Shown here piece after piece: positions 1 to 61,158 of a DNA stretch of 64,000 nucleotides. Every line of letters starts with the position of its first letter. Within the stretch, counting starts at the first letter, position 1. This DNA is from Lytechinus pictus. Taxonomy: Eukaryota. Position numbers and translations under genes: made by a program. The stretch spans positions 39,184,001 through 39,248,000 of the forward strand of contig NC_087249.1 in assembly GCF_037042905.1 (NCBI RefSeq), in the 5' to 3' direction. Under the pieces are notes generated by a model, which saw only the letters and a program-made list of their open reading frames with translations, had not been told where the DNA came from and made no database searches.

Positions 1-993
1 ACGTACATGTATGACTTTCATACAAAGCATTATCCAAGGTAGAGTTATGATTCACGGTAGATACATAGAATTAAAGCCAAAACAATAGCAGATTTGTAAT
101 TTTTTAAATCATGCATTCGGTGTAGTATTTTCAGTCAGTTTGTAACAATTAATGCTTATCAATCATACCATACTACCTGCATAATGATACATTTACAAAC
201 AGTGTGTAGGGTTTAAAGAAAAGGTATACACTGTGACAAATATACATAACTTCTCTTCACTTCCATGATCTACCACATGGTAAAGGAAATGCCTCTCTTG
301 TAACTCATATAGCCTGCATGTATTATGAAATTTGTTGAAATACTTTCAATTATTTCATTGCATAATTCTAGCTCTATTTATCATTTTACTAACATTGGTA
401 CATATCTCAGAAAACAGTAGACTCTTATCTACATTTTATTCATTCAAGGGGTGAGAGTTTTTTTTTTACTTTTGGGTAGGTGGTATCAGATAATAGTTAC
501 AAATCTCAATATACTTGTAATATATACATGGATACACGTACAAACATGAAATACCAGAATTTGGATTCTGTAATAATGATAATAAAAAGATAATGTCAAA
601 ACATTTTATTTTAAAAATATGAAAATAGACAGTGTCAGTGAAATATTTACAGCTTGCTTTTTAATGATATTTATAAAAACAAGCACGTACATGTATGACT
701 TTCATACAAAGCACTATCCAAGGTAGACTTATGATTCATGGTAGATACATAGAATTAAAGCCAAAACAATAATAGCTGATTTGTAATTTGTAAAATCATC
801 ATGCATTCAGTGTAGTATTTTCAGTCAGTTTCTAACAATTGACGCTTATCAATCATTATACCATAATACCTGCATTTTGATACATTTACAAACAGTGTGT
901 AGGGTTTAAAGAAAAGGTAAACACTGTGACAAGTATACATAACTTCTCTTCACTTCCATGATCTACCACATGGTAAAGATAATGCCTCTCCTT
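1..993. repeat. Direct repeat with ~684-bp period in the 3' non-coding region of the Helentron
   Basis: 1-300 (acgtacatgtatgactttc...atgcctctcttg) recurs almost identically at 685-993. Confidence 0.85.
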
Positions 994-1136
994 GATAAAT
1001 TTCTTTCCAATCAAACAAACATTATTGTACTCTTTGTTTTTCTGTTATCTGATTTACCAATTATTTCACTCTCACTGTATAAAAGTTTGTACTTAGAAAC
1101 ACTTTGTTTTAAACTAGTCTTCTTTACCATACAAGA

Positions 1137-4100
1137 TTATGTATTACTTGAAAGTTGTACACAGGATGAAGGGATAGCTACATATACCATCTTATGGTAA
1201 CTGTAATGGCTTTCTAATGTCCCACTTGACAGTTTGTTTTCCTCAATATTTGTAAATACCAAGTCAATTGTTGTACATCCATTTGTTGTGAATTCACAAA
1301 TAAGTTGTGTACATTTGAATAACTGTGTCATTGCATTCACAAGCTTTTGTTTGTTTGGAGTAGAAGTAAGCATATTGATATTGAAATCTCCCATGATAAC
1401 AAGTGGTTCATTTGGGTTAATATAATTACCCAAGTGTTGTAGTGCTCTGTGAATTTTTCTCCAATTTTCTTTAGGACGACAATACATAGAAACCACTTGC
1501 AACTTAGGACTATGAGAAGGAAGCTGAACTACTGTCATTTCAATTGACTGGAAATTACATGGAACAACTGTACATTGCAAGCCTTTCCTGTGGTATACAG
1601 CACTTCCATAGTGTGTACGTTGTGAGCTAAAGTCATTTCTTGACATCTTGAAATTATCCATTTCATACTCACATGCTTTATCCATAGAACACAGTTTTGT
1701 TTCAACAAATAAATTGATATCGGATACCTGTAAGTTGAAGTATTTTTGTATGTCTTTCATATGAAGGTGCAATGACTGGCAGTTGTGGAAAGCTATTTTG
1801 ACACAATCTTTTGGATAGTCATACAATGGCTTGTAGCAAAGAGTCATTGATTTAGACTGTCTCAAACGTTCCATTTCTGTCATCACATCATCTGAAACTT
1901 TGATATGAGCCAGGTTTAGAGGACCAATGATATGCAAATTTTGTAATGATGGCACTCTACTGAAAGCAACATAATGAAGATGGACAGCCTTTCTGTCAGG
2001 TAATTGGACAACTGCTCTATCTAGAGTGCTTCCTTGAGCTCTGTGTATTGTTTTAGCACATGCTAATTGGAGGGGGAATTGTTTTCTTGATACTTTCACT
2101 GCTTTGTATCTCCCAATTGCAAACTCTCTGGCTATTGGTTTAATTGGTGTCCAGGACTGATGAATCGCATTGTTGGTATGTTTTGGATATTCATGTCTCA
2201 GTTTGAGCCCTGTTTCTTCTGTCTCAAAAAGTACCCATACTATTTCCACATTCCCACTCTTGTCATATTGGAAATATTTTGAAACACATGCTGCTCCATT
2301 AACTAATCCATCTGCTGTGTCTATGTTGACAGTTAGTTCAGCTTTGAGCTCTAAAGCAAGATTGCATGTTTTAGATAGCCCCATTTCTTTGGCTTTGGCA
2401 CATGACAAAACTTTTTGCTTGACTTCATCTGTGATATCACCAATAACTATGTCATGAGATGCCAAGACAGCTTGGTTTGCTACACTACTGTGTAATTGCT
2501 TGTTATGTGCATCAACAGCCTCATTGTGATACAACAAATGAGTGACATCAACTGGGTAATTCTCATCTTCTTTAGAGATTATTCTACCTTTTAGTAATTT
2601 AATGTCTTCTTTGGTTTGCTTGCCTTCTCTCATTCTGTTCAACAATGCTGCATAAGCTACATCTTCTTTTTGTCTCATAATGTCTGTTAATTCAAACAGC
2701 TCGAAGTTGTTGGTCCATACATTTGGTGCCAGAACTTCTGTACTTGATGTAGTAGTTGGATTTTTAAAAATCCAAGTGTCCATTACTGGCTGCAATTGGA
2801 AAAGATCGCCAATAGCTATAATACTGACACCTCCAAATGGTTTTGATACATTCATTACTTCTTGTAATCGTTGGTTTATGAAGCAAAACATCTTTGTTCC
2901 AACCATAGATATTTCGTCGATGAATACAAGCTTCAATTCACCAAGTTGGGTTCTGAGGGTGTTGCGTTTGTCATGTGATAAAGGTTTATAGCTAAAACCT
3001 TGGTTAGCAGGAATGCAAAATGCAGAATGGAGGGTTTGACCCCTGATCAAATAGGCTGCTTTACCAGTAGGTGCTGTGAGGAGTACCTTAATTACATCTG
3101 GATTACTACCAGATTCTGTGTTATAATGCCTCACAAGTGCCTGGTATAGTGACTTGATTACTCTTGTCTTTCCAACTCCTGCACCTCCACTCAAGAAGAG
3201 GAGTAACTGTTCATCTGAAGTTTTCACTTTGTTTAGTACATGATTAAAGAATTCAGATTGCTTTTGATTAAGAGAAGAAACAATTTCCCTGAATTTACTA
3301 TCAGACAATCTATTTCTGATTCTCTCTTCTTGCATGTCTGTTCCAGTCGATTGTATACCCAATTCAGAAGCAATATCATAGCTAGTGAAGAGATCTTCAC
3401 CTTCTATAGCATTTCTATCTTTGCCAAACTTATTTGCATTTATCTCATTAATATGTTCATTGCAAGGAGCTACATTATGAAGGTTTTCTTCATTTGAGTC
3501 ATTAAGCAGTTTTTGTTCAGCCATATCTAACTCTTCAGCATACTGGTTGTACTCTTTCTGTTTTTCTTCTATTACTTGTTTTACCATTTGGTATCTTTCT
3601 TCATATGTTTGGCAGTTTCCAATGATTTCACTCTCACTGATGTAAGGGTAAAAGAGCATCAAATTTTCTCTGTAGTAATTTTCTGGATCTTTTTCTTTGT
3701 CATATCTCACATAGCGTATCACTTTTTGCTTTTTCCTTTGTTTCATAATCACTGTGTTTGAGATTTTCAATTCACCAAGACATGTTTGTTTATTTTGATA
3801 TAGATCAGAGTCATCAGGTTCATCTTCTTTGTTATCATCACTGTCTGTTTCAGGCAGTTCTAATTCATGCACTTTTCTCTTCTTCTTGAACTGTACTTTT
3901 TTCATATCATACCATGCAATGAAATCTGCTAAGCACATGTCCCGGGCCTTCCTTGGCCGTTCTGAGTATCTCTTGATGTTATTGCTGCACTGAATGTCGT
4001 CACTATCAGCAGGCAAAGCATCAAGTTGCTCTGAAGGTTTGAGTATAAAAGGTCTCTGATCTGGAGGTGAAGTGTTAACAAATGCATGCCCACATGATGA

Positions 4101-5152
4101 ATGCTTTAGTGGCATTTGTAGAGAGAGATATATTGCTTCAGGTGCACTAATCTCAACATTTTTAAGAAATTTGTTTCCAATCAAACGAACTTGATCTTTG
4201 ATATCAGTTGATCCTTTTCTAGCTTCATCACATGTTCGTCTCAAGAGTTCACTCATGCCTCTTTGGCCTTTAGAAACATAGTTCACAACATACATTGCAC
4301 AAGCATAAGCATTGGTAATGAATTGTATGTCTGTATTTGCTTGCCATGCCTGGAGTACAGCAGGGTTATACGCATTCACACGTACATTGCATGGTTCTCG
4401 TTTGAGAAACACCTTTGAAGCTGAAATAGAACTTCTGATTGCAAGCTCATAATCATCAGGTGAAATGCCAAAATGGTCAAGAAACAGTTGAAGAGTAAGT
4501 TGCTGGATTTCAGGTTTGTTTAGTTCAATTTGTATTTCTTTCCATTTCTGTTTATGTAACTGCTTTTCTTTGTCTTCCATTTCAACTGGCAGAGGTTGTA
4601 AGATCTTTGTAGACTCCATAGGAGGCAATGGGAAATTGAACCTGCACACTTTACCCTTTTTTCGACAAGTATGTGTGTGTCTGTGACATTGCAGTTTTTT
4701 CAAGTTCTCATTTACACCCAAACTTTGTCCGTCTGTTTCAATGAAGTTGTCAATGTAATTTTCAATGTCTGAATTTGAATCTATCTCAAATTTAGGGGCC
4801 CCATTCACCCACAGAAGACTGTGCAGATGGGCTGATCCTCTATGTTGGAACTCTATCCTGTAGAAATGTTCTGAAATTTTCCCAAGTGGCTCACATGAAC
4901 CTTGAAGGAAATTTTGATAGAATTTTTTCACTCTGTGATCAAAATATCTTGTGACAGTGACAGGATCTGATCGAATAAGTCTATTTTTTGTTTCCCAAGT
5001 GAAACTTGAAACATCTTCCGCACTATACTGTTTGTTGTCAACAAGTTTACCCAAAGATATTAAGAGATCAGTCCAATGTGACTCAGCAGAAGACAAAGAA
5101 ATAAACCATGTTGGTAATCCTAACTGTCTAATCATTGCAAACAGATCCTTTT
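1137..5152 (-). CDS. Helentron RepHel protein, C-terminal part: HUH Rep catalytic motifs, PIF1-family SF1 helicase, exonuclease-endonuclease-phosphatase (AP endonuclease) domain
   Basis: ORF 1137..5282. Rep motifs [51 protein letters not shown]. Helicase motifs GGAGVGKT, PTGKAA, FIDEISM, GDLFQLQPV, FPLQLACAKTIHRAQGSTL, YVAFSRV. EEP motifs HNCQSL, ETK, GDFN, TIDLVF, SYH. The first 44 aa of the called ORF come from the inserted element. Confidence 0.93.
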
Positions 5153-6236
5153 CAGTCAGTCCGCAAGCCCCTGTGTTAATGAGCAAATGAGCAAGATTTA
5201 TCCAAGTCCTCTCGTGGCTGAATTCATGTCCCTGCAAAATCTCGTGAATTATGAGACTTTTTTTATCAAAGAATTTAACCACTTTCTCCTTGAATAATAT
5301 TGATTATTTTTGTACCATGGGCAAGAGTAAATGTTACTCTTTTATATTGGTCATTTCTTTTGAATGAAATATCTTAATAAATAAGTGTATTTTTTACCTG
5401 AAAAGATGCATCAAACAGAATTTTCTTCCTCTGTTTTCACTTGCAAATTGTGCAACATTTTGTGTTTTAGGCACCAACATTATTTATATGATCAGAAAGC
5501 TCAAACTCTATACTTTCTTACAATGTCACTCTTGATATGTGGCATCTTTTAGATGGGTCAGCAGCCAGCTTGTTCCATCAAGATGCAAGACGAGATTTCT
5601 GAAATTTCTGAGTAACATACAATCCAGAGTTCTGATTGGCTCAATACTGTTTTCAAAACAAACAGGCGCGGGTAATTTGAAGAGATTACCACATGGTGAG
5701 TGTGACCTTGCAGAGGCCCAGTGTGGGGAACATTGGAATTTGAGTGGGTGTGTGGTCCCTTTGACCAATCAGAGCGCAGTATTCTTGTTTTTGAGCTGCA
5801 AAATGTACTTGGCCTATGAAAAGCTGGCTGCTGACCCATCTAAAATACATCTTCTTATAAAAATTATATCATATTAAAGCTTAGATCTTCAGCTTTATCA
5901 TGATTTAAAAATCATTTGTGCCCAAACAGAAATTAAGTGTGAAAACAACAACTTTTGTTGCATGAAAAAAAATATTTTGTTTCATGTTTTAGATCAAAAG
6001 TTTTTCCTATATTACAACATTCTTTTAAAAATCCAAACACATGACCTGAAAGAATGATTCTTCTTCTTTACAAAGATACCAAAAACATGAAATTTGGTCA
6101 ATATTTAGAGCAGCAATGGCCGAATAAAAAGAGGTGTTTTGGTTCGCACCAAGCTCATTAACTATGCAAAAACCCTCTAGTCATGAATATCACTTGGATA
6201 AAAGAAGCTACCTTTTCAGGGCTTGCGGACTGACTG
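5153..6236. mobile_element. Non-autonomous TIR DNA transposon (MITE) inserted in the Helentron ORF
   Basis: Perfect 18-bp TIRs CAGTCAGTCCGCAAGCCC (5153-5170) and GGGCTTGCGGACTGACTG (6219-6236). Flanked by T4 and T5 where the uninterrupted codons need only T5, implying a 4-bp TTTT duplication. No transposase ORF. Superfamily not assigned. Confidence 0.92.
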
Positions 6237-9200
6237 TTTTTGGCTGTTTCCCAGTATGGTGGAGATCCTCTTAAAGTTCTGAAAATTCTATATCCTTCAT
6301 CTAATTTGACCATGGAGTCAACAACATCTTGTTGTTTGACATCTCCTGCAGTATATGACTTGCCTGATGTTTTAACCCGCCTTAGTGAAAGCCATATCTT
6401 ATCTTTGATCTGTTTCATTTGGAGTTTCTTGCATTTGAAAAAGATGTTTGTTACAGATTTTGCTGCTCTTCGATCAGAATGTCGTAATTCTAATTTGCAG
6501 ATATCACTGTACTTGAGAGGTATTTCTCTATCTTTGTTACTTGGCCTTCGTTCCCCACAAAATATAGTTGGAAATGATAATTCCTCAATATCAGCCTGTA
6601 ATGAACTAATTGGTATATTTCCCTCACTGGGTGCAAAAGAGAGAATGTTTTGTTGATCATCAACATTTTGTGGATACAACATAGTGTCCAAACTTCCAAC
6701 AGGTTCTTTTTCATCAATTTCACTCCAATCAGAGTCACTATCTTTTTCTTTCTCCTCGGTTTGGGAAGCAGAAACATTAACTGCAGTAGGTACTATGTTA
6801 TCTTCACAAGTGCTCTCTTCGAGAAACTCTTTCCATTGAGTTTTATGCATTTCTGCAACATGAGTTGGCCAAAATTCATCTAAACCGTCTGTAACATATT
6901 GTTTAAACAGAGGCTGTTTCACTAAGTATTTTGTTGCTTCAAAACACTTCTGTGGTCTGATGTTTTCAAACATGTAATGACTTTTGTACCGAAGACGTTT
7001 CTTTAGTTTTACAGGGATGGTATGTGAATCATTAATAGAGCGAGGCAGTGAATTTACAATTGAAATATTGTTGGCAGGAACATTAACAACATTCCCACGG
7101 ATTCCAACTTGTCCACCACTTGGCAACTCACGAAGTTGGAAAAATGTATTTACTGGGGAAACCAGCCTCTCTTCAAGTGGGTTTAGTTGTAGCTCTGTTG
7201 GACAATGAGGAAATCCAGTTCTATTAGCTGATGAAAGTGGGGGGAGTTTATTCTTTAGCATCCAACTTTGACAAGTGTGGCAAATCCATTCTTTGCCTTC
7301 AACACTTAATGTTCCAGTGATACACTTTGAGTGAAGAGATTTATCAGTATTCCTAACAACAAACACATCATTAACAGACTGTTTAAACCATAGCTGCTTG
7401 CAGCATGTGCATATATACTCACATGCTACTGATACTGCTTCTTTAAAGTGCTCCACAAGTTCATCAATTGTATTGGAGGGAAATCTGTTGCTTTGTTTAC
7501 GTAAAGCGTCATCTTTAGATTCTTTCTCTCTGTATGCTGGATTGCTTCTCCTTTGTTTGTTGATGTTTCTCTCAAATTCTTGGAATGACGGAGCTCTTCT
7601 TCTCTTTCTATTGTTTCTTTTTTCAATTTCTTTATATTCCGGATCTTGTCGTCTTCTCTTCTTGAGGTTACTCTCAAACTCTTGGAAGGATAGATCTCTT
7701 CTTCTTGTTTTGTTTTTTCTTTGTTCATTATCTTTGTATTCCGGATCTTGTCTTCTACTCTTCTTGAGGTTACTCTCAAACTCTTGGAAGGATGGATCTT
7801 TTCTTCTTCTTTTGTTTTTTCTTTGTTCATTTTCTTTGTATTCCGGATCTTGTCGTCTTCTCTTCTTGAGGTTACTCTCAAACTCTTGGAAGGATAGATC
7901 TTTTCTTCTTCTTTTGTTTTTTCTTTGTTCATTTTCTTTGTATTCCGGATCTTGTCGTCTTCTCTTATTGAGGTTACTCTCAAACTCTTGGAAGGATAGA
8001 TCTTTTCTTCTTCTTTTGTTTTCTCTTTGTTCATTTTCTCTGTATTCCGGATCTTGTCGTCTTCTCTTATTGAGGTTACTCTCAAACTCTTGGAAGGATG
8101 GATCTTTTCTTCTTCTTTTGTTTTTTCTTTGTTCATTTTCTTTGTATTCCGGATCTTGTCGTCTTCTCTTCTTGAGGTTACTCTCAAACTCTTGGAAGGT
8201 TAGATCTTTTCTTCTTCTTTTGTTTTTTCTTTGTTCATTTTCTTTGTATTCTGGATCTTGTCGTCTTCTCTTATTGAGGTTACTCTCAAACTCTTGGAAT
8301 GACTGATCTCTTCTTCTCTTTCTATTGTTTCTTTTTTCATTTTCTTTGTATTCTGGATCTTGTCTTCTACTCTTTTTGAGGTTTTTCTCAAATTCTTTGA
8401 AGGACAAATCTCTTCTCCTCTTTCTGTTTGCACTTTGTTCACTTTCCTTATATTGTGGGTCTCTTCTTTTCTCCTTTCTGAGTGTCCTTTCTAATTTTGT
8501 ATAGGAAGAATTCTGTCTTTGCTTACGCTTGTATTCCATCATATAGGTCTTTCTTAGGTTTTGAGACAAGTGTGTATTAGCAACAATTTGTCCAATTGAC
8601 CTTGATAGCTCTTGAAAGTTTGCTTGAGAAACAAAGTATGAACTGAGAGTGTCTAATCTTTCAGTTGGGAATGGTATAACTTTGCCTTGCTGTAAGCACA
8701 ATTTGAGATGTTGTCTGATTTGTGAATTGTCAAATCTTTGAGTTTGTGGTGGCACATTGAACAGACAGCTAAATGCAGCAGCTATTGCAAAAGCTCCACA
8801 AGCTGGTTCAGTTTGTTGGGTTATTGGAATGTACTCTATATGCACAGCTGTTCCATACAATAGATTGATTTGAGGCATTAAATGCTTAATTCTGTCCTGT
8901 GAAGACAATGAATCATACACAGATACTCGATTGGTGGAAGGGTCATATGAGGATGTGACCCAATGGTTATCAACATGATGGAAGTTGATACAATGTTTAT
9001 CTCTAGGAATATCAATAGAAACTCCTTTAGAAAGAAGAACTTTCATGGCTGCAGGTGTCACTTGTCCAATGTATTGATCTAGTTGTGGACTATGATTTTT
9101 CATAATTGATACAGCTTGTTGTATGACATCATCAGGGATGTATGCTGCGTATTCATCCACTGAACTCATAGATTCTTTATTTAGATTCGACAAGGATAAG

Positions 9201-9871
9201 TGTTTTTTGTGAGTATTATTATTACTGATTGCAGTCAGTTCTTCTTTCCGTTGCTGAGTATTCACACTGCCAATATTACTCTGACCATGAGCACTTGATA
9301 AAATGCTATGACTCGGGGTTTTATCATTCTTGTTCACAGTGGTAGTGCATTTGTGACTTTTGAACTTTTGATAAGTACTAAACCTTAGGTTGCAAGCATG
9401 ACAGTATGAGCATTTATGCTGAAGAAGTCTTTTCTGGGTTGAAAAGCTTTTACAGCAGTTAGTACATTTACAACTTCTTAATTCGTCACAGAGATCTTGA
9501 TCATTAGAAGGTACTTGTTTAATGCACTTATGTAAGCTTATTTTTTGCTTGGAAGGAAAAATATTTCCACATTGTTGACATAAACAACATTTGTGTAGTT
9601 TCATCTTTTGCTTGGTGGAGAAATCTTGCCCACATTGTTTACACAAAGTGCATGTATGACTTCTGAAAGCTTTCAAATACTTGTAAGTTTGAGTGCATTC
9701 ATTGCATGTGAATATGTTGCCATTGTATATATGGCTCCCTCTATTTCCTACAAGAAAATGATCTTCGTGGAATCTTTGTGTCAGTGAGGAAATAATACAA
9801 GTGACATTGTTAAAAGAAATATAACAGAACGCGAACAGCGTCAGGGTAAACATGTAAACAAAATAAGACAT
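6237..9871 (-). CDS. Helentron RepHel protein, N-terminal part: C-x2-C-x12-H-x-C finger repeats, Ulp1/C48-like cysteine protease, 34-aa charged repeats, Cys-rich domain and start of Rep
   Basis: ORF 6158..9871 ends with ...[19 protein letters not shown], which joins in frame to [11 protein letters not shown] once the 5153-6236 insertion and one TTTT copy are removed (7647 nt, 2548 aa). The true start may be on a spliced upstream exon (candidate acceptor ttttcttgtag at ~9748-9758). Confidence 0.88.
7560..8460 (-). repeat. Coding tandem repeat with 102-bp unit (2 x 17 aa; RRRQDPEYKENEQRKNK / RRRKDLSFQEFESNLKK), about 8 units
   Basis: The c(c/t)ggatcttgtc motif recurs every 102 bp from ~7639 to ~8353. 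Confidence 0.95.
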
Positions 9872-12825
9872 CCTTATATATAGTCAAGGTTATAATTGAG
9901 TATCAGGAGAATCTAGTTGAGATTACAAATGAGAAACCTCTGGAAAGTGACTTTGTTCATTTCTCCTTTACAGATGCCTTTCAGTAGTATCCATATACCG
10001 CAAGCAAAGTACTGTCGAGTGTAAGATTCTTTCTGTTTCAGTCAGTGCATTGAAGTGTTGCCCACGCAAAAAAAACTTGGAATACTTTGTATCCTGCAGT
10101 CTGAGGTAAAAAAAAGAAAATCATTGACTTTTAACACTGTACAATGTGTCTGTTCATACAAGGCCAAGGCTAAATATCTACTTTTGAGAGATTTTGAGTA
10201 GGTGTAATTCTATACTGATTAGCAATGAATTGATAAGTAATTCTGTTAAATGCCATTAATTATGATTATCCTCATTAACATCATCTCCATCTTTTTAATC
10301 AATTATTTCTTGAGTATTTATGATATAAATTGATATTATTGGGGTTATCATTCTTTTTTATCACCATTATTACATTATTCATGTATTATTAATTTGTTTG
10401 TGTATGAAATGATAATAATTGCTTTTTATTTAAATAAGCGGTAATTTTAAAACGAAATTCAATCTTTGTCATAAAATGATGTGTCAAAGTGAAAGAAAAT
10501 AAGAAAAGAGAATAGTGAAAGTTTAGCTTATATTTGGCCGTAATAATAAAATTCATCAAATGTGATTGAAACTGTCTTTTTGTTACCGTCACTGCATTTT
10601 TAAACTAAATGTAATTATACTGACAAAGATTTTGTTAATGATATAAATTTGTTCAATCCTTGGCCCAATAACTTTTGAACATTTTGTATCCTGCAATTGA
10701 GAATAGAAGACTGTTCATACTGAAACACTATAATGCCTTTATATACACCAAATGGTTATTTGCAGTTTGCATAAAGATATAGACAAATCCTGATGCTTTT
10801 GAAGTATATTGTATTTCTAAGAAAAGAATAAAGTACCAAAATAATGCAAAGTTTGATGTATTCAAATTTCTTACCAAATTGATTTGATTCTACAGAAAAT
10901 TTTCCCCTTTATTTTGCACATTACACATGTTTTTTTGTGTCTAATGTTGAGATTTGATGTAATCTTTATGTAAATGCAAAATCTATTTAGCTTAAAGTTT
11001 TGAGTACTCTTGATCTCATTGATAAGTACATACATGTATTTAGTCATGTGCTCGTACATCAGATCAATGTACTCGAATTCACAGTTGAATACCTACATGT
11101 AATTGTAATTAAACTCTCGTTTTTCATCTTATTTTGACATACTTTTGCAAATTGAATTCCATCTAATTTTATCTTATGATACTAAATAATGAAGGTATAG
11201 TATAATTCATTATCATTTTAATAACACACTGAAGTTTAGATTAAAACCTTCATTCATTTAGTAGCTTTCTCAATTATAATTTTAAACTGGAAAAGTGTTT
11301 ACCATATGATTAGTGATGAAAAGATTTTTCAAACTTGAATTTGCTTCAAATCAACCTCATCAAACAGATCACCTGTAATTCAAAATACAGAAGAAAAAAA
11401 TTTGTCAAAATTAGAATACTCATTCACTGTCAATTCAAATGATTGTTTGCTTTTTGCATACAGATTATAAAAATTAAGACCTAGTATTCTATAATAGAAA
11501 TACATATTGTTTTAATTTCCAGTTTAAATATGCAATCTAACTATCTAAGTTTGTTTTATTAGTATTTCAATTTTCAAAACAGTTAATGTTCACTATTGGA
11601 AAAAATGATATAATAAATCACACATTCAAAATTTTTATAGAAAATTAATACAAAAATTTCATAGACAACCATTTTCATTTCTTTCATTTATATTACAAAG
11701 CAAAATTGAATATAGTTTATACACTATTTTGCCTAACAAATTCCATATTGTATTATTGCCAATAATAAATTAAATTCAATTCTTTACCCAAAATCAAAAT
11801 TTGACAAACTTATCAAATAAATAAAAGAATAATTTTGAAATAAATTGAATTCTGTATATAAATGCATTGAATGACTTTCTTTCATGAGATACCAAAAATA
11901 TATCACCTACAAAGCCAGCTTATTATAGCACCAAGTCAAGTATATTAGATAATTTTTGATATCTCATTATAAAAGCATCCAATATGGTTAGAACTACTGT
12001 ATATATTTTCTGTTTAATCCTATCATTATGTGTATGCAAAATATCCATGCTTTCTTGAGTGCATCATACAGTCCTTAAGACTCTGCATAAAATCATACTA
12101 TATAAAGAGAAAATGAATTGTACTGGAAGTACATGTAACGCATAATTGGTAGACAAGAATAAAGAAAATAGATGGAAGATATTATTTGATAGAAAGAATG
12201 AAGCTGTATACAGTAACATCCAGAACTGTTCACCTTCTCTTTTTAGAGTATGATTTCAATGCAATGTCTACACATGTATGATTCTTTGAGCACCCATTAT
12301 CTAGAATGCAAGATAATTTGCTTTTCCTAAATCCTATATTTAAGTATATTGTTAGTTTCCCTTTCCTAGTGCCGTTCTATAGGGAGTATAAGCGACTTAT
12401 TTACTGTTGAGGCTTTCCTCGATCGCACCACCATACTCCAATACTAGGCACCGTGTTTCTTTATTTCAATTGTGTATGACCGAAATTCTGTATTCATACG
12501 CCCTATTAGGACTGTTGGACTTCAGCCACTGGCTTCGGCACGTACTAGCCCAGAATTTTTCTAACAGGTCATATTCACAAGGGTACACTTAATACATCAA
12601 TTTAAAATAAATCCAAACCTAATGTAGTAAAGAGAGCAATCAAATTCTGGATTAAATTTCCAACTTATAGAATTGTTTTTAAATCTCAAAAATTTTGAAA
12701 TTTAAAATTAAATCTATAAGTGTCAAAATAAATCCAGTATTTAACTGTTTCTAACTACAGTCAGTTTGGATTAATTTCAAATCCATGCAATGTAGTGTGT
12801 CTACTAACAATTCTTCAAGATGAAA

Positions 12826-12952
12826 ATAATCTATTGAAGAATGAAGATAATCTATTGAAGAACGAAGATAATCTATTGAAGAATGAAGATAATCTATTGA
12901 AGAACGAAGATAATCTATTGAAGAATGAAGATAATCTATTGAAGAACGAAGA
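12826..12952. repeat. 21-bp tandem minisatellite (taatctattgaagaa(t/c)gaaga), about 6 copies
   Basis: Read directly. It lies just downstream of the predicted Helentron TSS on the minus strand. Confidence 0.92.
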
Positions 12953-12979
12953 ATACATGTAACTTCTGCTACTATTGGC

Positions 12980-13605
12980 GTCAATGAAATATCTGTCAAA
13001 TTTCACTCCTATTTATACATTTTACAGAGACCCTCTGCACCAAGTTTTCATCCAATCAAATTGTCTTCCTACAAACAACCAATCACCTTTAAAGACAAAA
13101 AAAAGAACCAATCAAAATCAAGATCCAAATGTTCATTAAGCTCATTTGAATATGCAAAATTTATTCATGGCCACTCCTCAGGTGTTTATCTCGAATTAGC
13201 AGCTGTTTTTAACTGAAAAACAACTTTTACAATGAACAAACAAGAAATGTACATTCAAACAAACAACATTTCTAATGTATTACATTTTTAGGTCAGTGCA
13301 CTTGTACTTTCATGACCACAACATTCCCAAAGGTCAGCTAACCCAAACTTTAACATAATCTATACAAAACAGGACCCTAACCTCACACTTTCAACCAATC
13401 ACTGTTCTTGAGATTTGCCTATAATGCAAATAAGGATCCTAAGCACACTTGTGTCAACCAATCACTAAACATATATATCATCCAATCCCTTCACAGCAAA
13501 GTCCACCAATTGCATTGCTTATCTATTCTGCACTGACTAATTGGAAATGACACTAAATAATAAAGATAACTATTTGCATATAATTTGTATATTATGCAAA
13601 TAATG
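12980..13605 (-). promoter_or_regulatory. Putative Pol II promoter of the Helentron: TATA box, Inr, clustered CCAAT boxes and octamer motifs
   Basis: Minus-strand TATAAATA at 13010-13017 and Inr-like TCATT with +1 at ~12985, 32 bp downstream. CCAAT at ~13052, 13079, 13108, 13395, 13458, 13482 and 13506. Octamer ATGCAAAT/ATTTGCAT at ~13424, 13572 and 13594. Confidence 0.55.
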
Positions 13606-13621
13606 ATTTAGTTTTATGCCA

Positions 13622-13658
13622 ACCTAGAAGGAATCTTCAAAACAGATTCCTTCTAGGT
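13622..13658. other. Perfect 14-bp stem-loop, candidate Helentron terminal/subterminal palindrome
   Basis: ACCTAGAAGGAATC (13622-13635), 9-nt loop, GATTCCTTCTAGGT (13645-13658). Confidence 0.7.
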
Positions 13659-13799
13659 CTGCATACAATTCAACTTTTTCATGCCTTTACCCACCATACA
13701 TTTATGTGACCCTATTCTCATTAAAATCCTAAAACTAGTTTAGTCCAAACTACTGTAATAAAGGTGCACTAATGTGAATTAGCAATCTTCCAAACCAAT

Positions 13800-15688
13800 T
13801 TCAAATGCACCATCCCAAGAAGCCAATTGATTTTGAGGTCAAATTAATAGATTTAAATTTTTTTTTGGTGTGTCGATAGATGACACCAAAATACACGCCA
13901 AGTTTAGAGTCCGCAGGTCAAAGGTCAGACCTCATTAAATATGCGAGATGGTTTCCGCATGATAATTTATAAAATACCCAACAGATTTAAAAAGTTTGTG
14001 GTATGCAGGTTGATCAAACCAAAATACAGGCTTAACTTCAAATTCAGAGTCCGCAGGTCAAAGGTCACAGCTCATTAAATATGCAAGTTGGTTTCTGCAT
14101 AACTTATGAAATATTCAAGAGATAGAAAAAAAAATTGGTGTGTAAATAGATGACACCAAAATACAGGCTTAAGTTTTAATTCGGAGTCCGCAGGTCCAAG
14201 GTCGCAGCTCGTAAAACTTGCAAGTTGGTTTCCGCATGATCACTTCTGAAATATTCAACAGATTTAAAAAGTTTTTAAGGGGAAGGTTGATGACCCCAAA
14301 ATACAGGCTAAGTTTGAATTCAGAGTCCGCAGGTCAAAGGTCACAGCTCATTATATATCCAAGTTAACTTTCGAAATATTCACCAGATTTAAAAAATGTT
14401 TAGTGTCTCAATAGATGACATCAAATGACCTGACTTTCATATCTTCTATTAGAGATTATTATACAAAGGGCGAGCGAGTCTTTAGGTCAAAGATCTAAAT
14501 TTCTTCATTATACAGTGCGTATCAAAAAAAAGTTTACACTTAGAAAATTATACATTTGTCATATCCTGAAGATTTTTCCACATTTTAACATTTGTACAGA
14601 TCCATTTAAGCAAATGACTATATAACTGTCAAAAAACATTTCCACTTGAGTGAGCACCACTTACTTTTCAAAAGTTAGTCAATAATGATTCGCACAGAAC
14701 TTTCAAATAGTTATGCGAATAAAAGTAGACCTTTAATAATCATGAATAACACGTCGAATTTAGCTAGTAAAATTGATTGTAAGATATATTTTACCTTTTG
14801 TATTTTGTTTCCTTTCCCAAACTACTTCAAGGTGTGCATTGCACCCCACCCCACACACCGAGGCCATTGTGACAATATTTGCTTTACACTTACATGTAGC
14901 TGTGATTTACATAAAATGGCTTAGGCTTGATTTTCATTTTGTCAATCATTGTCAAGCTTGGGAAAAGTGTGGAGAAACATGTATTTAATAAAAAATGAAA
15001 TGTAAACCCACTATAAATGATAAAAACTTAGTGAAAAAATACTACAGATATCTGGTATAAACTTTTGTTCAGATTCACTTATGTCCTCAGATCCAGCTGA
15101 CACAAAAAGAGTAAAGGTTGTGTTAATTAAGTGTTAAAATTTCAATTTGAGTGGTAAAATGGTTAGAAAATGCTTGAATGTATCCGATTTATTTCAATTG
15201 ACTTAAAGTGCAAGGAAAATGTAGGAGAAATGTTTCGCAGGGTAAGTTTGATTTCGCCCTTTCCCCTTGACACAGCGTACAAACAAGCATTTCTGTGCAA
15301 ACAGATTTCTGCGAGCTTTACAAATCGGACAGTGCTCACTCAAGTGTAACATTCTGTCAAAACTTTTACTTTCATTGGATAGATGAGACCCAAACCCATG
15401 ATTATATGTCAAAAAATTACCCACATGGTGTATATTTTTTACTTCCCAGGGCGTTTTCAAAGTGTAAACTTTTTTTGATACGCACTGTATATATGCATAT
15501 TGGTTTCTACATGATTTTAAGTTCAATCATATTGAATGAATTTGTGATTACATTAAGCGAGGGCGTCTGTATCCTTTAGACAGGTCATATTTCTAGTTCA
15601 ATTATTCAATACCCGTTTTCAAACTCAGCACTGCTGCTTGCTCTGATCGCGCAATGCAGGCGAGACAGCCAGAGGCGTTCCACTTGTT
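13800..15688 (+). mobile_element. HINE-like (non-autonomous Helentron) fragments with ~139-bp internal tandem repeats, ending in the family 3' terminus
   Basis: gagtccgcaggtc(a/c)aaggtc recurs at ~13907, 14047, 14184 and 14322. The 3' end ...tgcaggcgagac..ccagaggcgttccacttgtt (15655-15688) is shared with 25732-25765. Confidence 0.55.
14513..15487. mobile_element. Tc1/mariner-type MITE
   Basis: ~29-bp TIRs CAGTGCGTATCAAAAAAAAGTTTACACTT and its reverse complement, flanked by TA (14511-12 and 15488-89). Confidence 0.9.
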
Positions 15689-15805
15689 ATTTTGTTCAAT
15701 TTATTTTTCTAATTTTTGTATTATTCTGCATGTAATTAGTAATATCATGTTTATTTGTTAAGTTATTTTCAAAAGTTTGTATTATTCTGCATGTACAGTA
15801 ATTGG

Positions 15806-23100: not shown

Positions 23101-26100
23101 CCTCCGCGCGCTGCTGCTGAATACACAGCGGAGTGCAAGCCGCGGTTCATGCATGCACAATGTCAATGGCGATTGGGTGGTTGAGCGTATAAACGATGCT
23201 ACTTCGCGGGATGTTCCTGAGAAACTCCCATTTGTTCCTGACAAATATGGTAAATATTCCTGACAACCATCCCTTTAGGTTGGCATCTCTGAAGAAATAA
23301 TAGCAAGAAATTACCCCCCCCCCCTCTCTAACATCAGGGTAATGGGTGCTTTGTAGCTCTTGGTTTCAAGCATCCTCTGGGTATGCTGGAGTACTATGCC
23401 ACCTTTGTCTGGAATATTCTTTGCTTCCATCCCAATCTTATCTTCAATATCTTTCTTTTTCTTCACCATCAGGGTAACATTGCCCAGGCTCTGAATCAGC
23501 TCTTCCACTGCTTTGCTGCTCTCGGTCGCAACCATCCTCTGGGGATGCTGGAGTACTACACCTCTTTCGTCTGGAACCTCCTCAGCTTCCCTCTCAACCT
23601 CATCTTCAAGGGCCGTGGGATCGGTGCCCGGCTCTCCAGGCCGAAGGCGGACAAGCAGAAGGATGGGGAATACCCCGTTGGGCAGACCACTGCAAGAGAC
23701 ATTGCCAAGACATACCACCACATTGTCCAGCTCTTCTTGACAGGTGTGTACATTCAAGCCAAATATAACACAATCTTTTATACAAATGCCATATGAAAAA
23801 GTGGTCATATTTCTATAATAGCTTAAATGTTTTTTTGGGAAACGTAATGCTAGAAAATAATCCAGATTGTTTGGAGGATAAAAAGGGGTTGTGGTTATAC
23901 AGATAGCAATGGGAAGGAGGAGGAGGATAAAAATTATAGAGGAAGAAATATGAGAAGGAAAAGGAGGAGCAGAAGAAGAATAGGAATATCACCAAGGGAA
24001 AAAGGGAAAGGGGGGGGGGAAGAAGTACAGTAGCAAGTAGAGGTTGAACATTTTTTAATGGCAGTGGTGGAAGTATTGATTTTGCAGAGGAGTGACCATT
24101 TAATTCTCATTGAATTGAATTGAATTAAATTGAAACTTTACTCATTAACAACTGTTGTACAAAATCCCGTTATATGATAGAGCAAGAATTGTGCTACATT
24201 TCTTTCCATTCCTTTCAGTGATGCGTTTGACGAGGACCACCTAATCATCCTGAGTTTTGGGATAATTAGGCTTGGTGGGTCCGCAGATGGCTGATCAGGC
24301 CAATCTGTGCCTAATAGTCTTTGTCATTGTGGACAGGGAATACTGGCAGGTGTTACAGGGTAGTAGTCCTTACCTTCCTAGCCCCCCTGTATTCTACAGC
24401 CACTGCAATTCTGTTGGACCTGCATACTTTGGCACTCTTTTGAACAGCTGTTCACCATGCTGCTCTGTTCTTCTTGGAGTAGTGTGAGCCTTTTGAATGT
24501 GAGACCATCTAGTTTTTATTAACAGCTATGGAACAAGTTCCTTTTTGTAACGATTGCTCTTTTATTCCCCTCCATGTGCAGCTAATTTTTCTCTTGGTGT
24601 ACCGCGAGCCTTCTACATGGGTATGTGCAGCATCAACCACGCTGAGAGGGCCAGGGATGCTATGAGTGCGATAGAACGGGCTGAGATCTATGCCACCGTA
24701 GGGGTGCTGATCAGAACCAAGTTCTCTAAATCACTCCAATGGCTGGCGGTAAGTCCCCTTTCTGTTCAATGGCCCATATTCTGAAGTCAGGTTTAACTTA
24801 GGTCTTGGTTTACATGTAACTCAGTGCTAAAATTATGGGAAGCCACAAATTACAAAAAAAATCTTAACCGAAGGTTAAGTTTTTGAAATGACATCATAAC
24901 TTAGAAAGTATATGGACCTAGTTCATGAAACTTGGGCATAAGGTTAATCAAGTATTAGTGAACATCCTGCTCGAGTTTCAGGTCACGTGACCAAGGTCAA
25001 AGGTCATTTAGGGTCAATGAACTTTGGTCAAGTTGGGGGTATTTGTTGAATTACTATCATAACTTTGAAAATTTATGGATCTAGTCCATGAAACTTGAAC
25101 ATAAGGTTAATCAAGTATTAGTGAACATCCTGCCTGAGTTTCAGGTTACATGACCAAGGTCAAAGGTCATTTAGGGTCAATGAACTTTGGCCAAGTTGGG
25201 GGTATTTGTTGAATTACCATCATAACTTTGAAAATTTATGGATTTAGTTCATGAAACTTAGACATTAGGTTAATCAAGTACCACTGAATATCCTGTGCGA
25301 GTTTCAGGTCACATGACCTGATGACCATGGTCAATGGTCATTTAAGGTCAATGAACTTTGGCCGTGTTGGGGGTATATGTTAAATTACCATCCTAACTCT
25401 GAAAGTGTATGGATCTAGTTCATAAAACTTGGACATAAGAGTAATCAAGCATCACTGAACATCCCCTGTGAGTTTCAGGTCACAAAACCAAGTCAAAGGT
25501 CAGTTAAGGTCAATAAACTTAGGCCATGTTGGGGTAATTGTTGAAGTGCCATCATAACTTTGAAAGTTTATGGATAGAGTGAATGAAATGTGGACATGGG
25601 TGTAGTTGACAGTCTTAAGTCTCTGTTCAAATGTCATTTATGGTCAATGAACGTGGTATTATGTCATTATATGAATGATTATTTTATAGTAGTTTTCAAA
25701 GTTAGCACTGCTGCTATATTAAATTGCGTAATGCAGGCGAGACTGCCAGAGGCGTTCCACTTGTTCTTCAATTATCTAGATGAAACAAAAATAAGAAAAA
25801 GAAGTTTGCTCAATCGAAAGTAAAAGAACCCTTGATTTGAATCATGATATGTAGTTTACAATGATGTAAACAACCTTCAGCTTAACCCAGTGAGCCCTTT
25901 GCATGAGATAAATTGGACTGGGGTATGTGGGAAATGCATATTGTGTGGAAATCATGTAGTGTTCATTGGGTTAAACTCAAATTTCAACTAGATTATTATT
26001 TTTTAATTCTTGACAGAGCCCAGTGTTCTATCGAGTGCGGTTCATCCTGAATCGATCCAAGAGCCCCACTCCACCTATTCTGAATTGGACCTTGGTTGCT

Positions 26101-60300: not shown

Positions 60301-61158
60301 TTTTATTTGTTTCATCGGAATGCATATGTAGTTATTATTTGATAGATGAAAGTGGCATGCTTGTGGATGGATGTTTGTTTTATGTTACAGATAAATTGAA
60401 TATGTTGTTAATTGGTCTTGGAGTAAAGACAAGCAAAACGAATATTCAAAAATGTTTCTGGCCCTGCATTGCCATGGTAACAACATTATGGCAATATTGA
60501 AACCAGGGAAAAATACTAAAGCTATTATATTCATTTTTTCATCTCAACTTTTTTTTGTTAAGTTTTTCTAAGCATTTTTACCTATTTCTGTGTAGCTTAT
60601 TTTGTGAATGTTTTGGACTCATTCTCATTGTCACAACTCTTGTTGATTCTCTCCAATCTGAATTATATCAAATGATTCTTTTGTTTTAGTCTTATTCCTG
60701 TGATCACCTTTTTTTTCTTTACCAATGACGTTAACAGTAAAGTGGCAAAACAATTAGCATCTATTTTTTTTTGCTTATCATTATCTCGCCTGCAGAGCAG
60801 AATGAGATTATAGGCGCTGCTTTTATGACGCCGACATAAATTGGTTTCATTTGTACCTTACATGTAGTACAAACCGTGGACTAATTTGACAGTGTATGCA
60901 ATGAAAAAAATCTGCGTAGTCCACGGTTTTGTACCATGGTACAATTGAAACCACCTTTGTGAACTAGGGCCATTAAAGTTATGTAGTCATTTAGAGAATA
61001 AGTTTCGATGTGAAAGATATTGTTAAACTTTACCGTACAACAGGAGCCTGCTATACCCATTGCTATCGAAGTAGAGCCGACATTTGTTGCCCTTGGACCG
61101 TACCATTTGGCTGCGGGGATGAACAACAGAGCATGGTTTTATGTACTCAGTGACAAAG
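48333..61158 (+). CDS. WDR19: WD repeat-containing protein 19 / IFT144, 3'-partial (first 9 coding exons, about 416 aa)
   Basis: Exons 48333-48338 (MK), 53004-53161, 53909-54133, 54722-54854 (GC donor), 55392-55472, 55644-55756, 56773-56946, 58041-58284, 61044-61158. Peptides [73 protein letters not shown] and [24 protein letters not shown] match IFT144. The 6-nt first exon is less certain than the others. Confidence 0.94.
49519..52170 (-). mobile_element. Decayed, 5'-truncated non-LTR retrotransposon (RT pseudogene, RTE/RTEX-like) in WDR19 intron 1
   Basis: RT motifs [45 protein letters not shown], and a degenerate C-terminal knuckle [15 protein letters not shown]. Several frameshifts. 3' tail (TACAAG)2 at ~49519-49530. 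Clade assignment is an inference. Confidence 0.88.
50499..51527 (+). mobile_element. Internally deleted hAT-type transposon with 6-bp TSD, keeping the transposase N-terminal zinc finger (ORF 50890-51225)
   Basis: TIRs CAGAGATGCCAAC / GTTGGCATCTCTG. TSD CTGTTG at 50493-98 and 51528-33. Peptide [29 protein letters not shown]. Confidence 0.88.
56109..56642. mobile_element. Tc1-like MITE with degenerate TIRs
   Basis: gcatcccagaaaaaaggaaacc and ggtttccttttttgtgggatac are imperfect inverted repeats. Confidence 0.6.
59480..59650. repeat. Degenerate (ATT)n microsatellite
   Basis: Read directly. Confidence 0.9.

What the first reader, a model, noticed from the sequence alone, without database searches (positions are those of the whole stretch)
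1137..9871. Reconstructable ~2548-aa Helentron polyprotein with one lesion
Seen: the two large ORFs are one gene. Removing 5153-6236 plus one TTTT copy gives ...[22 protein letters not shown]... and an unbroken 7647-nt frame with no other stop or frameshift. Established: Rep plus PIF1 plus AP endonuclease defines Helentrons. Inference: this is a young, recently active autonomous family, and uninterrupted sister copies could still transpose and mobilise the HINE-like elements in this window.
Basis: partly seen in the sequence, partly recalled or inferred. Interest (0 to 1): 0.7.

Follow-up and report, generated by a model that had tools for sequence, protein, structure and literature searches.

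The report
Young rolling-circle transposon split by MITE
The two big reading frames are one gene of a very young, 17.6-kb rolling-circle transposon (a Helentron) that a small 1,084-bp transposon has cut in two. Four near-identical sister copies elsewhere in the genome lack that insertion and two of them still carry the whole gene, so this is a well-preserved but ordinary member of a known transposon class.

Summary
On the minus strand, 6237-9871 and 1137-5148 are one 7,647-nt frame. It is interrupted only by a 1,084-bp TIR element (5153-6236; 18-bp perfect TIRs; AAAA target-site duplication) from a family with at least 1,969 candidate matches.

The protein has zinc fingers, a C48-like protease, 34-aa basic repeats, DUF6570, a HUH Rep with the Helentron-type motif 2, a PIF1 helicase and a C-terminal AP endonuclease.

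The whole element is about 18.7 kb and runs from 2,975 bp left of the window to 15688. It has 13-bp subterminal inverted repeats, a terminal hairpin, a (GGC)n microsatellite, 160-190-bp central repeats and T-run flanks, with no target-site duplication.

Four sister copies differ from it by 0.15-0.8% and sit in unrelated flanks. All have the empty site:
- Two have uninterrupted ORFs (2,582 and 2,650 aa).
- One has a 2-bp frameshift.
- One carries a different transposon.

Differences between copies give dN/dS of about 0.28. At least 541 candidate matches to the terminal 99 nt, the fetched ones being 0.6-1.2-kb HINEs, share its ends. The two HINE pieces in this window are truncated.

Current activity is inferred, not shown. 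This is a new member of a known kind. The scan had already noted HINEs elsewhere in this genome.

The parts
1..15688 (-). Window part of one full-length Helentron copy. The element runs from window -2975 (G000:C5:39181025, outside the window, read as L009:2025) to 15688. It is 18,664 bp with the nested insert and about 17.6 kb without it.
   Evidence: Similarity at 98.8-99.7% to four copies on C1, C2, C4 and C5 starts and stops at these points, with unrelated flanks beyond them.
6237..9871 (-). Upstream piece of the Rep/helicase/endonuclease ORF (aa 1-1211 plus two bases of the next codon).
   Evidence: Open frame from ATG 9871 to the insert.
5153..6236 (.). Nested 1,084-bp non-autonomous TIR transposon (MITE-like). 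This is the only ORF-breaking lesion. Its target-site duplication AAAA lies at 5149-5152 and 6237-6240.
   Evidence: 18-bp perfect TIRs. At least 1,969 candidate matches in the genome; the 39 other full-length copies scored are 97-98% identical. 4-bp duplications in 11 of 11 other copies. Absent from all sister Helentron copies.
1137..5148 (-). Downstream piece of the ORF (1,336 aa plus stop): the rest of Rep, the PIF1 helicase and the AP endonuclease.
   Evidence: It matches the C1 and C2 sister proteins at 1,329 and 1,331 of 1,336 residues.
9347..9712 (-). N-terminal cluster of C2H2/C2HC-type zinc fingers.
   Evidence: Pfam zf-C2H2_4, E = 1.7e-5, four stretches. Zinc-finger-like motifs at the N terminus are described for Helentrons (PMC4067079).
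8660..9080 (-). Probable Ulp1/C48-like cysteine protease domain (His at 8960-8980, Cys at 8774-8800).
   Evidence: Pfam Peptidase_C48, E = 0.024, below the curated cutoff. Atlas feature search: 21 of 30 hits are C48 clusters, score 0.93. The AF2 single-sequence model was too poor to use.
7560..8454 (-). In-frame tandem array of 102-bp (34-aa, Lys/Arg-rich) units, 8.8 copies here. Sister copies have one or three more units.
   Evidence: TRF. ORF lengths of 2,548, 2,582 and 2,650 aa differ by multiples of 34. Similar basic repeats occur in homologues P0001, P0002 and P0021.
6905..7255 (-). DUF6570 domain.
   Evidence: Pfam E = 2.7e-13. Listed as an almost exclusively HLE2 (Helentron-group) add-on domain in PMC11417382.
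4812..5148 (-). Rep (HUH) domain, C-terminal part. Helentron-type motif 2 ([15 protein letters not shown]) is at 4821-4865. The N-terminal part of the domain is at 6237-6481, and the YxxxY motif (MYVVNYVSK) is further downstream at 4269-4295.
   Evidence: Helitron_like_N profile positions 100-191 match here. In the intact sister copy the profile matches 7-191 of 191 as one contiguous stretch. Motifs located.
2607..3272 (-). PIF1-like SF1 helicase core (Walker A GGAGVGKT at 3165-3188; Walker B VFIDEISM at 2904-2927).
   Evidence: Pfam PIF1, E = 2.2e-27. PDB Pif1 helicases at E = 1e-25 and Helraiser 7lcc at E = 5.5e-19.
1188..1631 (-). C-terminal apurinic/apyrimidinic-type endonuclease (EEP fold).
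   Evidence: Pfam Exo_endo_phos_2, 31.5 bits against a cutoff of 27.4, and Exo_endo_phos.
15654..15666 (-). 13-bp subterminal inverted repeat at the ORF-upstream end, 22 nt inside the terminus. Its partner lies outside the window at L009:2030-2042.
14513..15487 (.). Older nested element with TA target-site duplication and TIRs beginning CAGTGCG (Tc1/mariner-like MITE). All Helentron copies share it, so it is now part of the family.
   Evidence: Genomic copies of this MITE are 88-89% identical to it.
121..998 (.). Internal duplicated block of about 680 bp downstream of the ORF (its partner is at -559..303). The 162-192-bp central tandem repeats, the (GGC)n microsatellite and the terminal hairpin lie further left, outside the window (L009:2025-2805).
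24859..25765 (-). Truncated HINE-like relative. It has the ORF-upstream terminus (first 40 nt with one mismatch) and about 180-bp central repeats, but no microsatellite or hairpin end.
60781..60833 (+). Degenerate 53-bp fragment of a hairpin end (subTIR + IR) from a related element.

Best explanation
This is one copy of an autonomous Helentron (Helitron-like element group 2) in an unnamed 811-Mb animal genome.

**The gene.** One minus-strand gene of 2,548 codons encodes a single protein. From the N terminus it has zinc fingers, a probable C48-type protease, basic 34-aa repeats, DUF6570, a HUH/two-tyrosine Rep nuclease, a PIF1-type helicase and an AP-type endonuclease.

**The element.** The gene sits in a roughly 17.6-kb element. 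The element is bounded by 13-bp subterminal inverted repeats. At the ORF-downstream end it has an 11-bp-stem hairpin, a (GGC)n microsatellite and 160-190-bp central repeats. T-runs flank it and there is no target-site duplication.

**Likely mechanism (inferred from Helitron biochemistry, not shown here).** Rep nicks one strand at a terminus and becomes covalently joined to it through tyrosine. The helicase peels that strand off until the hairpin end signals termination. The strand is circularised and pasted into a T-rich target. The endonuclease may make the target nick.

**History of this copy.** After insertion, a 1,084-bp non-autonomous TIR transposon landed in the Rep domain and duplicated AAAA. 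That is its only frame-breaking lesion.

**The family.** The family is very young. It has five copies in unrelated sites, and two of them have unbroken ORFs. It also has short non-autonomous relatives (HINEs) with the same ends.
For: **Shown**
- Frame continuity and the exact insert borders.
- The empty site in all four sister copies and in an older 94% copy.
- Intact ORFs of 2,582 and 2,650 aa.
- Domain set.
- A contiguous Helitron_like_N match and homologue alignment across the junction, plus the Helentron-type motif 2 and YxxxY.
- 863 homologues, many carrying EN, OTU, Herpes_teg_N or DUF6570.
- Termini, subTIRs and unrelated flanks with no duplication.
- Hairpin with dG -11.2 kcal/mol and z -2.8 to -3.3, and three pairs with compensatory changes among 21 copies.
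- 0.15-0.8% substitution divergence between copies.
- 24 nonsynonymous against 22 synonymous differences, dN/dS about 0.28, p = 3e-5.
- The six private missense changes of the window copy all fall at columns that vary among homologues.
- A HINE family with at least 541 candidate matches sharing both ends.

**From the literature**
- The definition and structure of Helentrons and HINEs, and an autonomous Helentron whose ORF lies in minus orientation (PMC4067079).
- T|T targets and add-on domains including Peptidase_C48 and DUF6570 (PMC11417382).
Against: - There is no direct evidence of present-day activity.
- I found no paralogous empty site for the Helentron itself. The exact termini within the T-runs, and the absence of target modification, therefore rest on comparing flanks of a few copies.
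- No tree with named Helentron, Helitron2 and Helitron references was built.
- One of the two intact-ORF copies (C2) is separated from its ORF-upstream 4 kb by about 54 kb of clustered partial copies. It may not be a complete element.
- The HINEs are only 86-90% identical at one end and 72-85% identical in the repeats. They are not direct deletion derivatives of this young family.
- The endonuclease matches Pfam only modestly and matches no PDB sequence.
Confidence: 0.9

Rival explanations
1. The family is already dead or fully silenced. On this view the intact ORFs are simply too young to have decayed, and nothing transposes today.
For: - Only five young copies exist, and three are already broken by independent lesions: a MITE, a 2-bp frameshift and a Tc1/mariner-like insert.
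- The best HINE matches are only 86-90% identical at the ORF-upstream end. This suggests that the HINE burst was older or was driven by a relative.
- No expression data could be obtained.
Against: - Substitution divergence is 0.15-0.8%.
- Two ORFs of more than 2,580 aa remain open.
- dN/dS of about 0.28 among copies shows that selection for function operated during the very recent spread.
- At least one intact-ORF copy keeps both termini.
Confidence: 0.4
2. The five copies arose by segmental duplication or assembly redundancy, not by transposition.
For: The C2 locus is a cluster of full and partial copies. Some matches there are spaced exactly 5,000 bp apart, which could be local duplication or an assembly artefact.
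Against: - The copies on C1, C4, C5 (37.67 Mb) and the window copy lose similarity at the same two terminal nucleotides and have unrelated flanks.
- They lie on different contigs.
- More than 500 candidate matches to the terminal 99 nt; in the 15 complete short derivatives recovered both ends fall at the same nucleotides as the autonomous element.
Confidence: 0.03
3. 5153-6236 is an intron, or the two ORFs are separate genes rather than one gene disrupted by a transposon.
For: Nothing beyond the presence of two ORFs.
Against: - The stretch has perfect 18-bp TIRs and a 4-bp duplication.
- The genome holds at least 1,969 candidate matches to it.
- It is absent from every sister copy.
- The Rep domain is split in mid-profile.
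Confidence: 0.01
4. It is a domesticated, host-retained Rep/helicase gene rather than a mobile element.
For: dN/dS below 1.
Against: - It is multicopy at unrelated loci and has Helentron termini, a hairpin and HINE derivatives.
- Three of the five copies are broken.
Confidence: 0.02

Closest known systems
Helentrons / HLE2 (Rep-Hel-endonuclease rolling-circle transposons; Poulter 2003; Thomas et al. 2014, PMC4067079; HELIANO, PMC11417382)
   Same: - A single ORF with N-terminal zinc fingers, a HUH Rep with the Helentron-type motif 2 (FYR...QxRGS.HxH), a PIF1 helicase and a fused C-terminal AP endonuclease.
- 13-bp subTIRs, an IR/hairpin, a microsatellite and central repeats.
- T-run flanks without a target-site duplication.
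- HINE derivatives.
- Add-on domains DUF6570 and Peptidase_C48, both already listed for HLEs.
   Different: - It is large, at about 17.6 kb with about 10 kb of non-coding sequence.
- Motif 2 reads GSAHLH rather than GSPHxH.
- No RPA or OTU ORF was seen.
- It carries a variable array of 34-aa basic repeats.
Helentron-Da-40 / DINE-1 of Drosophila ananassae (PMC4067079)
   Same: It has a subTIR + IR hairpin + microsatellite + central-repeat layout. The Rep/Hel/EN ORF lies on the strand opposite to the T-flanked, IR-first orientation. The paper reports this 'minus orientation' as the exception.
   Different: The host lineage differs, there is no sequence similarity in the non-coding parts, and this element is much longer.
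Bivalve HINEs (pearl, Cg_HINE, DTC84, MgE; PMC7492417)
   Same: They are short elements made of subTIR/IR + microsatellite + roughly 160-170-bp satellite-like central repeats + subTIR. The closest protein relatives of this ORF are from bivalves (Mytilus 62%, Pinctada 57%).
   Different: The Cg_HINE study could not link its elements to any autonomous Helentron. Here an autonomous element carries the same module and the same ends as the HINE family. The host of this window is not identified, so I did not test whether these HINEs are homologous to the bivalve ones.
Helraiser / canonical Helitrons (HLE1; PDB 7lcc)
   Same: A HUH Rep + Pif1-like helicase transposase, a terminal hairpin and no target-site duplication. 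The helicase region matches 7lcc at E = 5.5e-19.
   Different: There are no 5'-TC...CTRR-3' ends and no A|T target. This element has subTIRs and a fused endonuclease, and its Rep region is too divergent to match 7lcc by phmmer.

Membership tests
Helentron (HLE2) | Rep (HUH, two-Tyr) domain with the Helentron-type motif 2: F/Y-x-R preceding (V/I)ExQxRG-S-x-HxH | tested here: met
   [15 protein letters not shown] at 4821-4865 and YVVNY at 4269-4295. Helitron_like_N E = 1.9e-23 in the intact sister copy. Criterion taken from PMC4067079.
Helentron (HLE2) | PIF1-family SF1 helicase fused downstream of Rep | tested here: met
   Pfam PIF1 E = 2.2e-27. PDB Pif1 hits at E = 1e-25. Walker A and B motifs are present.
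Helentron (HLE2) | AP endonuclease fused to the C terminus in the same ORF | tested here: met
   Exo_endo_phos_2 at 31.5 bits, above the 27.4 cutoff, in the last 150 aa of the same frame. Catalytic residues were not checked individually, and there was no PDB sequence match.
Helentron (HLE2) | Subterminal inverted repeats of about 11-13 bp | tested here: met
   A 13-mer at 15654-15666(-) and its complement next to the other terminus. Only 0.02 matches are expected by chance in the window.
Helentron (HLE2) | Terminal palindrome / IR forming a stem-loop | tested here: met
   An 11-bp stem with one bulge, dG -11.2 kcal/mol, z -2.8 to -3.3. 93.5% of cells are paired and three pairs have compensatory changes in 21 copies. 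The other end has no significant hairpin.
Helentron (HLE2) | Insertion into T-rich/TT targets without a target-site duplication | tested here: inconclusive
   In all copies and 15 HINEs the plus strand reads T(2-5)-element-TT. The flanks show no duplication. No empty site for the Helentron was found.
Helentron (HLE2) | Placement in the Helentron clade of a Rep/Hel tree with named references | not tested
   No named Repbase references were available. Indirect support: the top 120 homologues carry the HLE2-type add-ons EN, OTU, Herpes_teg_N and DUF6570 (PMC11417382).
Autonomous partner of a HINE family | Non-autonomous elements share both termini and the internal modules of the autonomous element | tested here: met
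   At least 541 candidate matches. In the 15 complete elements examined (0.6-1.2 kb), about 95% is covered by the autonomous element's first 89 nt (86-90% identical) and last 800 nt (72-85%; terminal 60 nt 88-100%). No near-identical (above 95%) deletion derivative was seen.
Currently active transposon | Insertion polymorphism, transcripts, or extrachromosomal circles | not testable with these tools
Ulp1 / Peptidase C48 domain | Significant profile match and a His-Asp-Cys triad in the C48 fold | tested here: inconclusive
   Pfam E = 0.024, 14.9 bits, below the 20.7 cutoff. Atlas features favour C48 at 0.93. The AF2 model has pLDDT 40. There was no PDB sequence hit.
Nested insert: TIR DNA transposon with 4-bp target-site duplication (superfamily unresolved) | TIRs plus a target-site duplication of constant length in independent copies | tested here: met
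   18-bp perfect TIRs. 4-bp duplications of varied sequence in 12 of 12 copies. No transposase was found, so the superfamily (Sola, Ginger, Academ and Chapaev all make 3-4-bp duplications) was not assigned.

The most novel reading that the evidence does not exclude
The family may be transposing now, and may be the living autonomous driver of the abundant satellite-carrying HINE family of this genome. If so, it would supply an autonomous-to-HINE link that a published oyster study could not establish. It would also give a natural, uninterrupted Helentron in which to ask what the fused AP endonuclease and the antisense ORF orientation do in rolling-circle transposition.
Probability: 0.4. Interest if true: 0.55.

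Novelty: new member of a known kind. Interest (0 to 1): 0.35.

Why it matters
In the papers I searched I found no experimental Helentron transposition system, and the role of the fused endonuclease is still a hypothesis (PMC4067079).

This family offers several things together:
- naturally intact ORFs of 2,582-2,650 aa;
- defined ends;
- a conserved and co-varying terminal hairpin;
- evidence of recent purifying selection;
- hundreds of short derivatives with the same ends.

That makes it a practical starting point for such work. It also bears on how satellite-like repeats are spread by HINEs. For genome annotation, it explains 18.7 kb of this locus and flags two very young, high-copy MITE families.

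Tried and rejected
- **Sequencing runs.** I did not seek reads by any other route and did not use read laying.
- **Empty site.** A search with the right flank found only unrelated repeats starting more than 110 bp from the junction.
- **Rfam.** No match on 1-16000.
- **Other genes in the element.** No ORF of 110 aa or more lies in the 5.8 kb upstream of the ORF, so no RPA or OTU gene was found.
- **C48-like region.** PDB phmmer gave nothing. The single-sequence AF2 model had pLDDT 40.5, so I ran no fold search on it.
- **Endonuclease.** PDB phmmer gave nothing.
- **Alignment.** A full-length MAFFT alignment of 46 proteins timed out. I replaced it with pairwise BLASTP columns.
- **Host.** I did not identify the host species. 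The exons in the window are too short for the length-filtered protein search. Neither settles the host.
- **Joined sequences.** I never built the joined window ORF. Continuity was checked by coordinates and against natural sister copies. In one search the two halves of the C5 (37.67 Mb) copy were placed side by side around its foreign insert, inside a script, only to count substitutions.
- **Rejected readings.** Intron, two separate genes, segmental duplication and a domesticated gene (see the rival explanations).


Full report
**1. Observation**

The window holds two large minus-strand ORFs, 6158-9871 (1,237 aa) and 1137-5282 (1,381 aa). Between them lies a 1,084-bp stretch (5153-6236). It has perfect 18-bp inverted repeats at its ends and AAAA on both sides.

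By coordinate arithmetic, removing 5153-6236 and one AAAA keeps GCC-AAA-AAG-GAT in a single frame. That gives 3,635 + 4,012 = 7,647 nt, or 2,548 codons plus a stop. I did not build the joined sequence. The check rests on the coordinates and on natural sister copies, which read ...[19 protein letters not shown]....

**2. The insert**

The 1,084-bp stretch belongs to a very abundant young family. The genome search found at least 1,969 candidate matches, and the 39 other full-length copies scored are 97-98% identical to it. Eleven of eleven other copies fetched have 4-bp target-site duplications of varied sequence. I did not assign its superfamily.

**3. The gene**

- Pfam finds DUF6570, the C-terminal half of Helitron_like_N, PIF1 and Exo_endo_phos_2 in the two pieces.
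- In an uninterrupted sister copy (L016:896-8641:-) Helitron_like_N matches profile positions 7-191 as one stretch. That stretch spans the junction.
- The word search found 863 homologues. The best is 71% identical (unnamed ENA protein), followed by Mytilus at 62% and Pinctada at 57%. Further homologues at about 50% come from Saccostrea, corals, a hemichordate and a holothurian. Most carry EN, OTU or Herpes_teg_N, and DUF6570.
- Ten of these align without a gap across WETAK|KDLF.
- The Rep motif 2 reads [15 protein letters not shown]. This fits the diagnostic Helentron signature of Thomas et al. 2014 (PMC4067079): F/Y-x-R, and S after G.
- The YxxxY, Walker A and Walker B motifs are present.
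- The helicase matches Pif1 structures and Helraiser 7lcc.
- Upstream lie C2H2-type zinc fingers, a probable C48-like protease and 8.8 in-frame 34-aa basic repeats. The protease rests on a weak Pfam hit (E = 0.024) and on Atlas features (0.93), so it is not proven.
- Peptidase_C48 and DUF6570 are already listed among domains stably carried by Helitron-like elements (PMC11417382).

**4. The element**

Similarity to four other loci runs from window -2975 (outside the window) to 15688 and stops there, with unrelated flanks beyond.

On the window's plus strand the element reads, in order:
- a T5 run;
- a 13-bp subTIR;
- an IR that pairs with the subTIR to form an 11-bp-stem hairpin;
- a (GGC)n microsatellite;
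- central repeats of 162-192 bp;
- the antisense ORF;
- 5.8 kb without a long ORF, containing an older shared nested MITE with a TA duplication at 14513-14587 to 15487 (full span 14513-15487);
- the complementary subTIR;
- 22 nt ending in TT.

The hairpin folds at -11.2 kcal/mol with z of -2.8 to -3.3. Among 21 copies it shows three base pairs with compensatory changes.

This is the published Helentron/HINE layout. Having the ORF on the strand opposite to the T-flanked, IR-first orientation is reported for Helentron-Da-40 (PMC4067079). No flank duplication is visible in any copy. I found no true empty site for the Helentron itself.

**5. The family and its age**

Five full-length or near-full-length copies exist. 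All four sisters, and an older 94% copy, have the empty site at the insert position.

| Copy | State of the ORF |
|---|---|
| Window (C5, 39.18 Mb) | Broken by the 1,084-bp insert |
| C1 | Open, 2,582 aa; both termini present |
| C2 | Open, 2,650 aa; its ORF-upstream 4 kb lies about 54 kb away, behind a cluster of partial copies |
| C4 | 2-bp insertion causing a frameshift |
| C5 (37.67 Mb) | 1,818-bp insert with TA duplication and 51-bp TIRs in the protease-like region |

The ORF lengths differ only by whole 34-aa repeat units.

Substitution divergence from the window copy is 0.15-0.8%, depending on segment. Outside the repeat array the copies differ at 24 nonsynonymous and 22 synonymous sites, against an expected nonsynonymous share of 0.80. 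That gives dN/dS of about 0.28, p = 3e-5. So part of this small divergence arose under selection for a working protein, that is, in transposing lineages.

The window copy's six private missense changes all fall at columns that vary among homologues. The insert is therefore its only evident disabling lesion.

**6. Non-autonomous relatives**

The terminal 99 nt at the ORF-upstream end finds at least 541 candidate matches. Fifteen complete elements of 0.6-1.2 kb are about 95% covered by two parts of the autonomous element. These are its first 89 nt (86-90% identical) and its last 800 nt or so (72-85% identical, with the terminal 60 nt at 88-100%).

They are HINEs of a related lineage, not fresh deletion derivatives of the 99% family.

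In the window itself, 24859-25765 keeps the ORF-upstream end and the repeats but lacks the hairpin end. The stretch 60781-60833 is a 53-bp remnant of a hairpin end.

Earlier notes of this scan (s1-322081, s1-329265) describe abundant HINEs with roughly 157-bp repeats in the same genome. The repeats seen here are of that kind.

**7. Mechanism**

The following is inferred from Helitron biochemistry and the Helentron literature, and is not shown here:
- The HUH Rep nicks one strand and attaches to it through tyrosine.
- The PIF1 helicase unwinds that strand.
- The hairpin end terminates the process.
- A circular intermediate integrates into a T-run without a duplication.
- The endonuclease may nick the T-rich target (a hypothesis of PMC4067079).

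**8. Verdict**

Helentrons, their HINEs, their add-on domains and their presence in marine invertebrates are all known, so this is a new member of a known kind. The same genome also holds many other Helentron-like frames of 3,100-3,500 aa without stops. Intact elements of this class are therefore not rare here.

Three things make the locus of some value:
- the direct pairing of an autonomous element with a HINE family that carries satellite-like repeats;
- naturally intact copies;
- the signal of selection.

Noticed in passing
G000:C10, C11, C12, C14, C16, C9, C13, C18, C129, C142, C186 (for example C11:24753342-24757679): A second, more numerous Helentron-like family. More than 20 loci match Rep, helicase and endonuclease at 32-37% identity and lie inside open frames of 3,100-3,525 aa without stops. 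The first look found 954 candidates.
   Followed up: no
G000:C2:41971103-42040500: A cluster of full and partial copies of this Helentron spread over about 70 kb. It includes 94%-identical partial copies whose matches are spaced exactly 5,000 bp apart (42003555, 42008562, 42013562, 42018562). This could be a real tandem array or an assembly artefact. The ORF-upstream 4 kb of the C2 intact-ORF copy lies at 41.971-41.976 Mb.
   Followed up: partly
window 8660-9080 (-): A probable Ulp1/C48-like cysteine protease domain inside the transposase ORF, at the position where most relatives carry OTU or Herpes_teg_N. None of the 120 fetched homologues shares it apart from a weak 25% match (P0082). The evidence is suggestive only.
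   Followed up: partly
window 7560-8454 (-): A 102-bp in-frame tandem repeat encoding Lys/Arg-rich 34-aa units with KRRRK-like motifs. The number of units differs among otherwise 99.5%-identical copies (8.8, 9.8 and 11.8). Related repeats occur in bivalve homologues.
   Followed up: partly
window 5547-5571 / 5821-5845: A perfect 25-bp inverted repeat 249 bp apart inside the 1,084-bp insert. The insert may itself contain a smaller nested palindromic element.
   Followed up: no
window 14513-15487, and L005/L006 (G000:C5, about 37.672-37.674 Mb): Two families of non-autonomous elements with TA duplications and TIRs beginning CAGTGCG (Tc1/mariner-like). One is an old insertion (88-89% identical to its genomic copies) now carried by every Helentron copy. 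The other is a 1,818-bp element with 51-bp perfect TIRs that recently broke the C5 (37.67 Mb) copy.
   Followed up: partly
L009:2119-2805 and window 24859-25600: The central repeats of the Helentron and of its HINEs contain clustered TGACCT/AGGTCA-type half-sites. This is the feature that earlier notes of this scan flagged as nuclear-receptor-like boxes.
   Followed up: no
window 12820-12952: A 21-bp tandem repeat (6.3 copies, 94% matches) in the non-coding part upstream of the ORF, shared by the sister copies.
   Followed up: no
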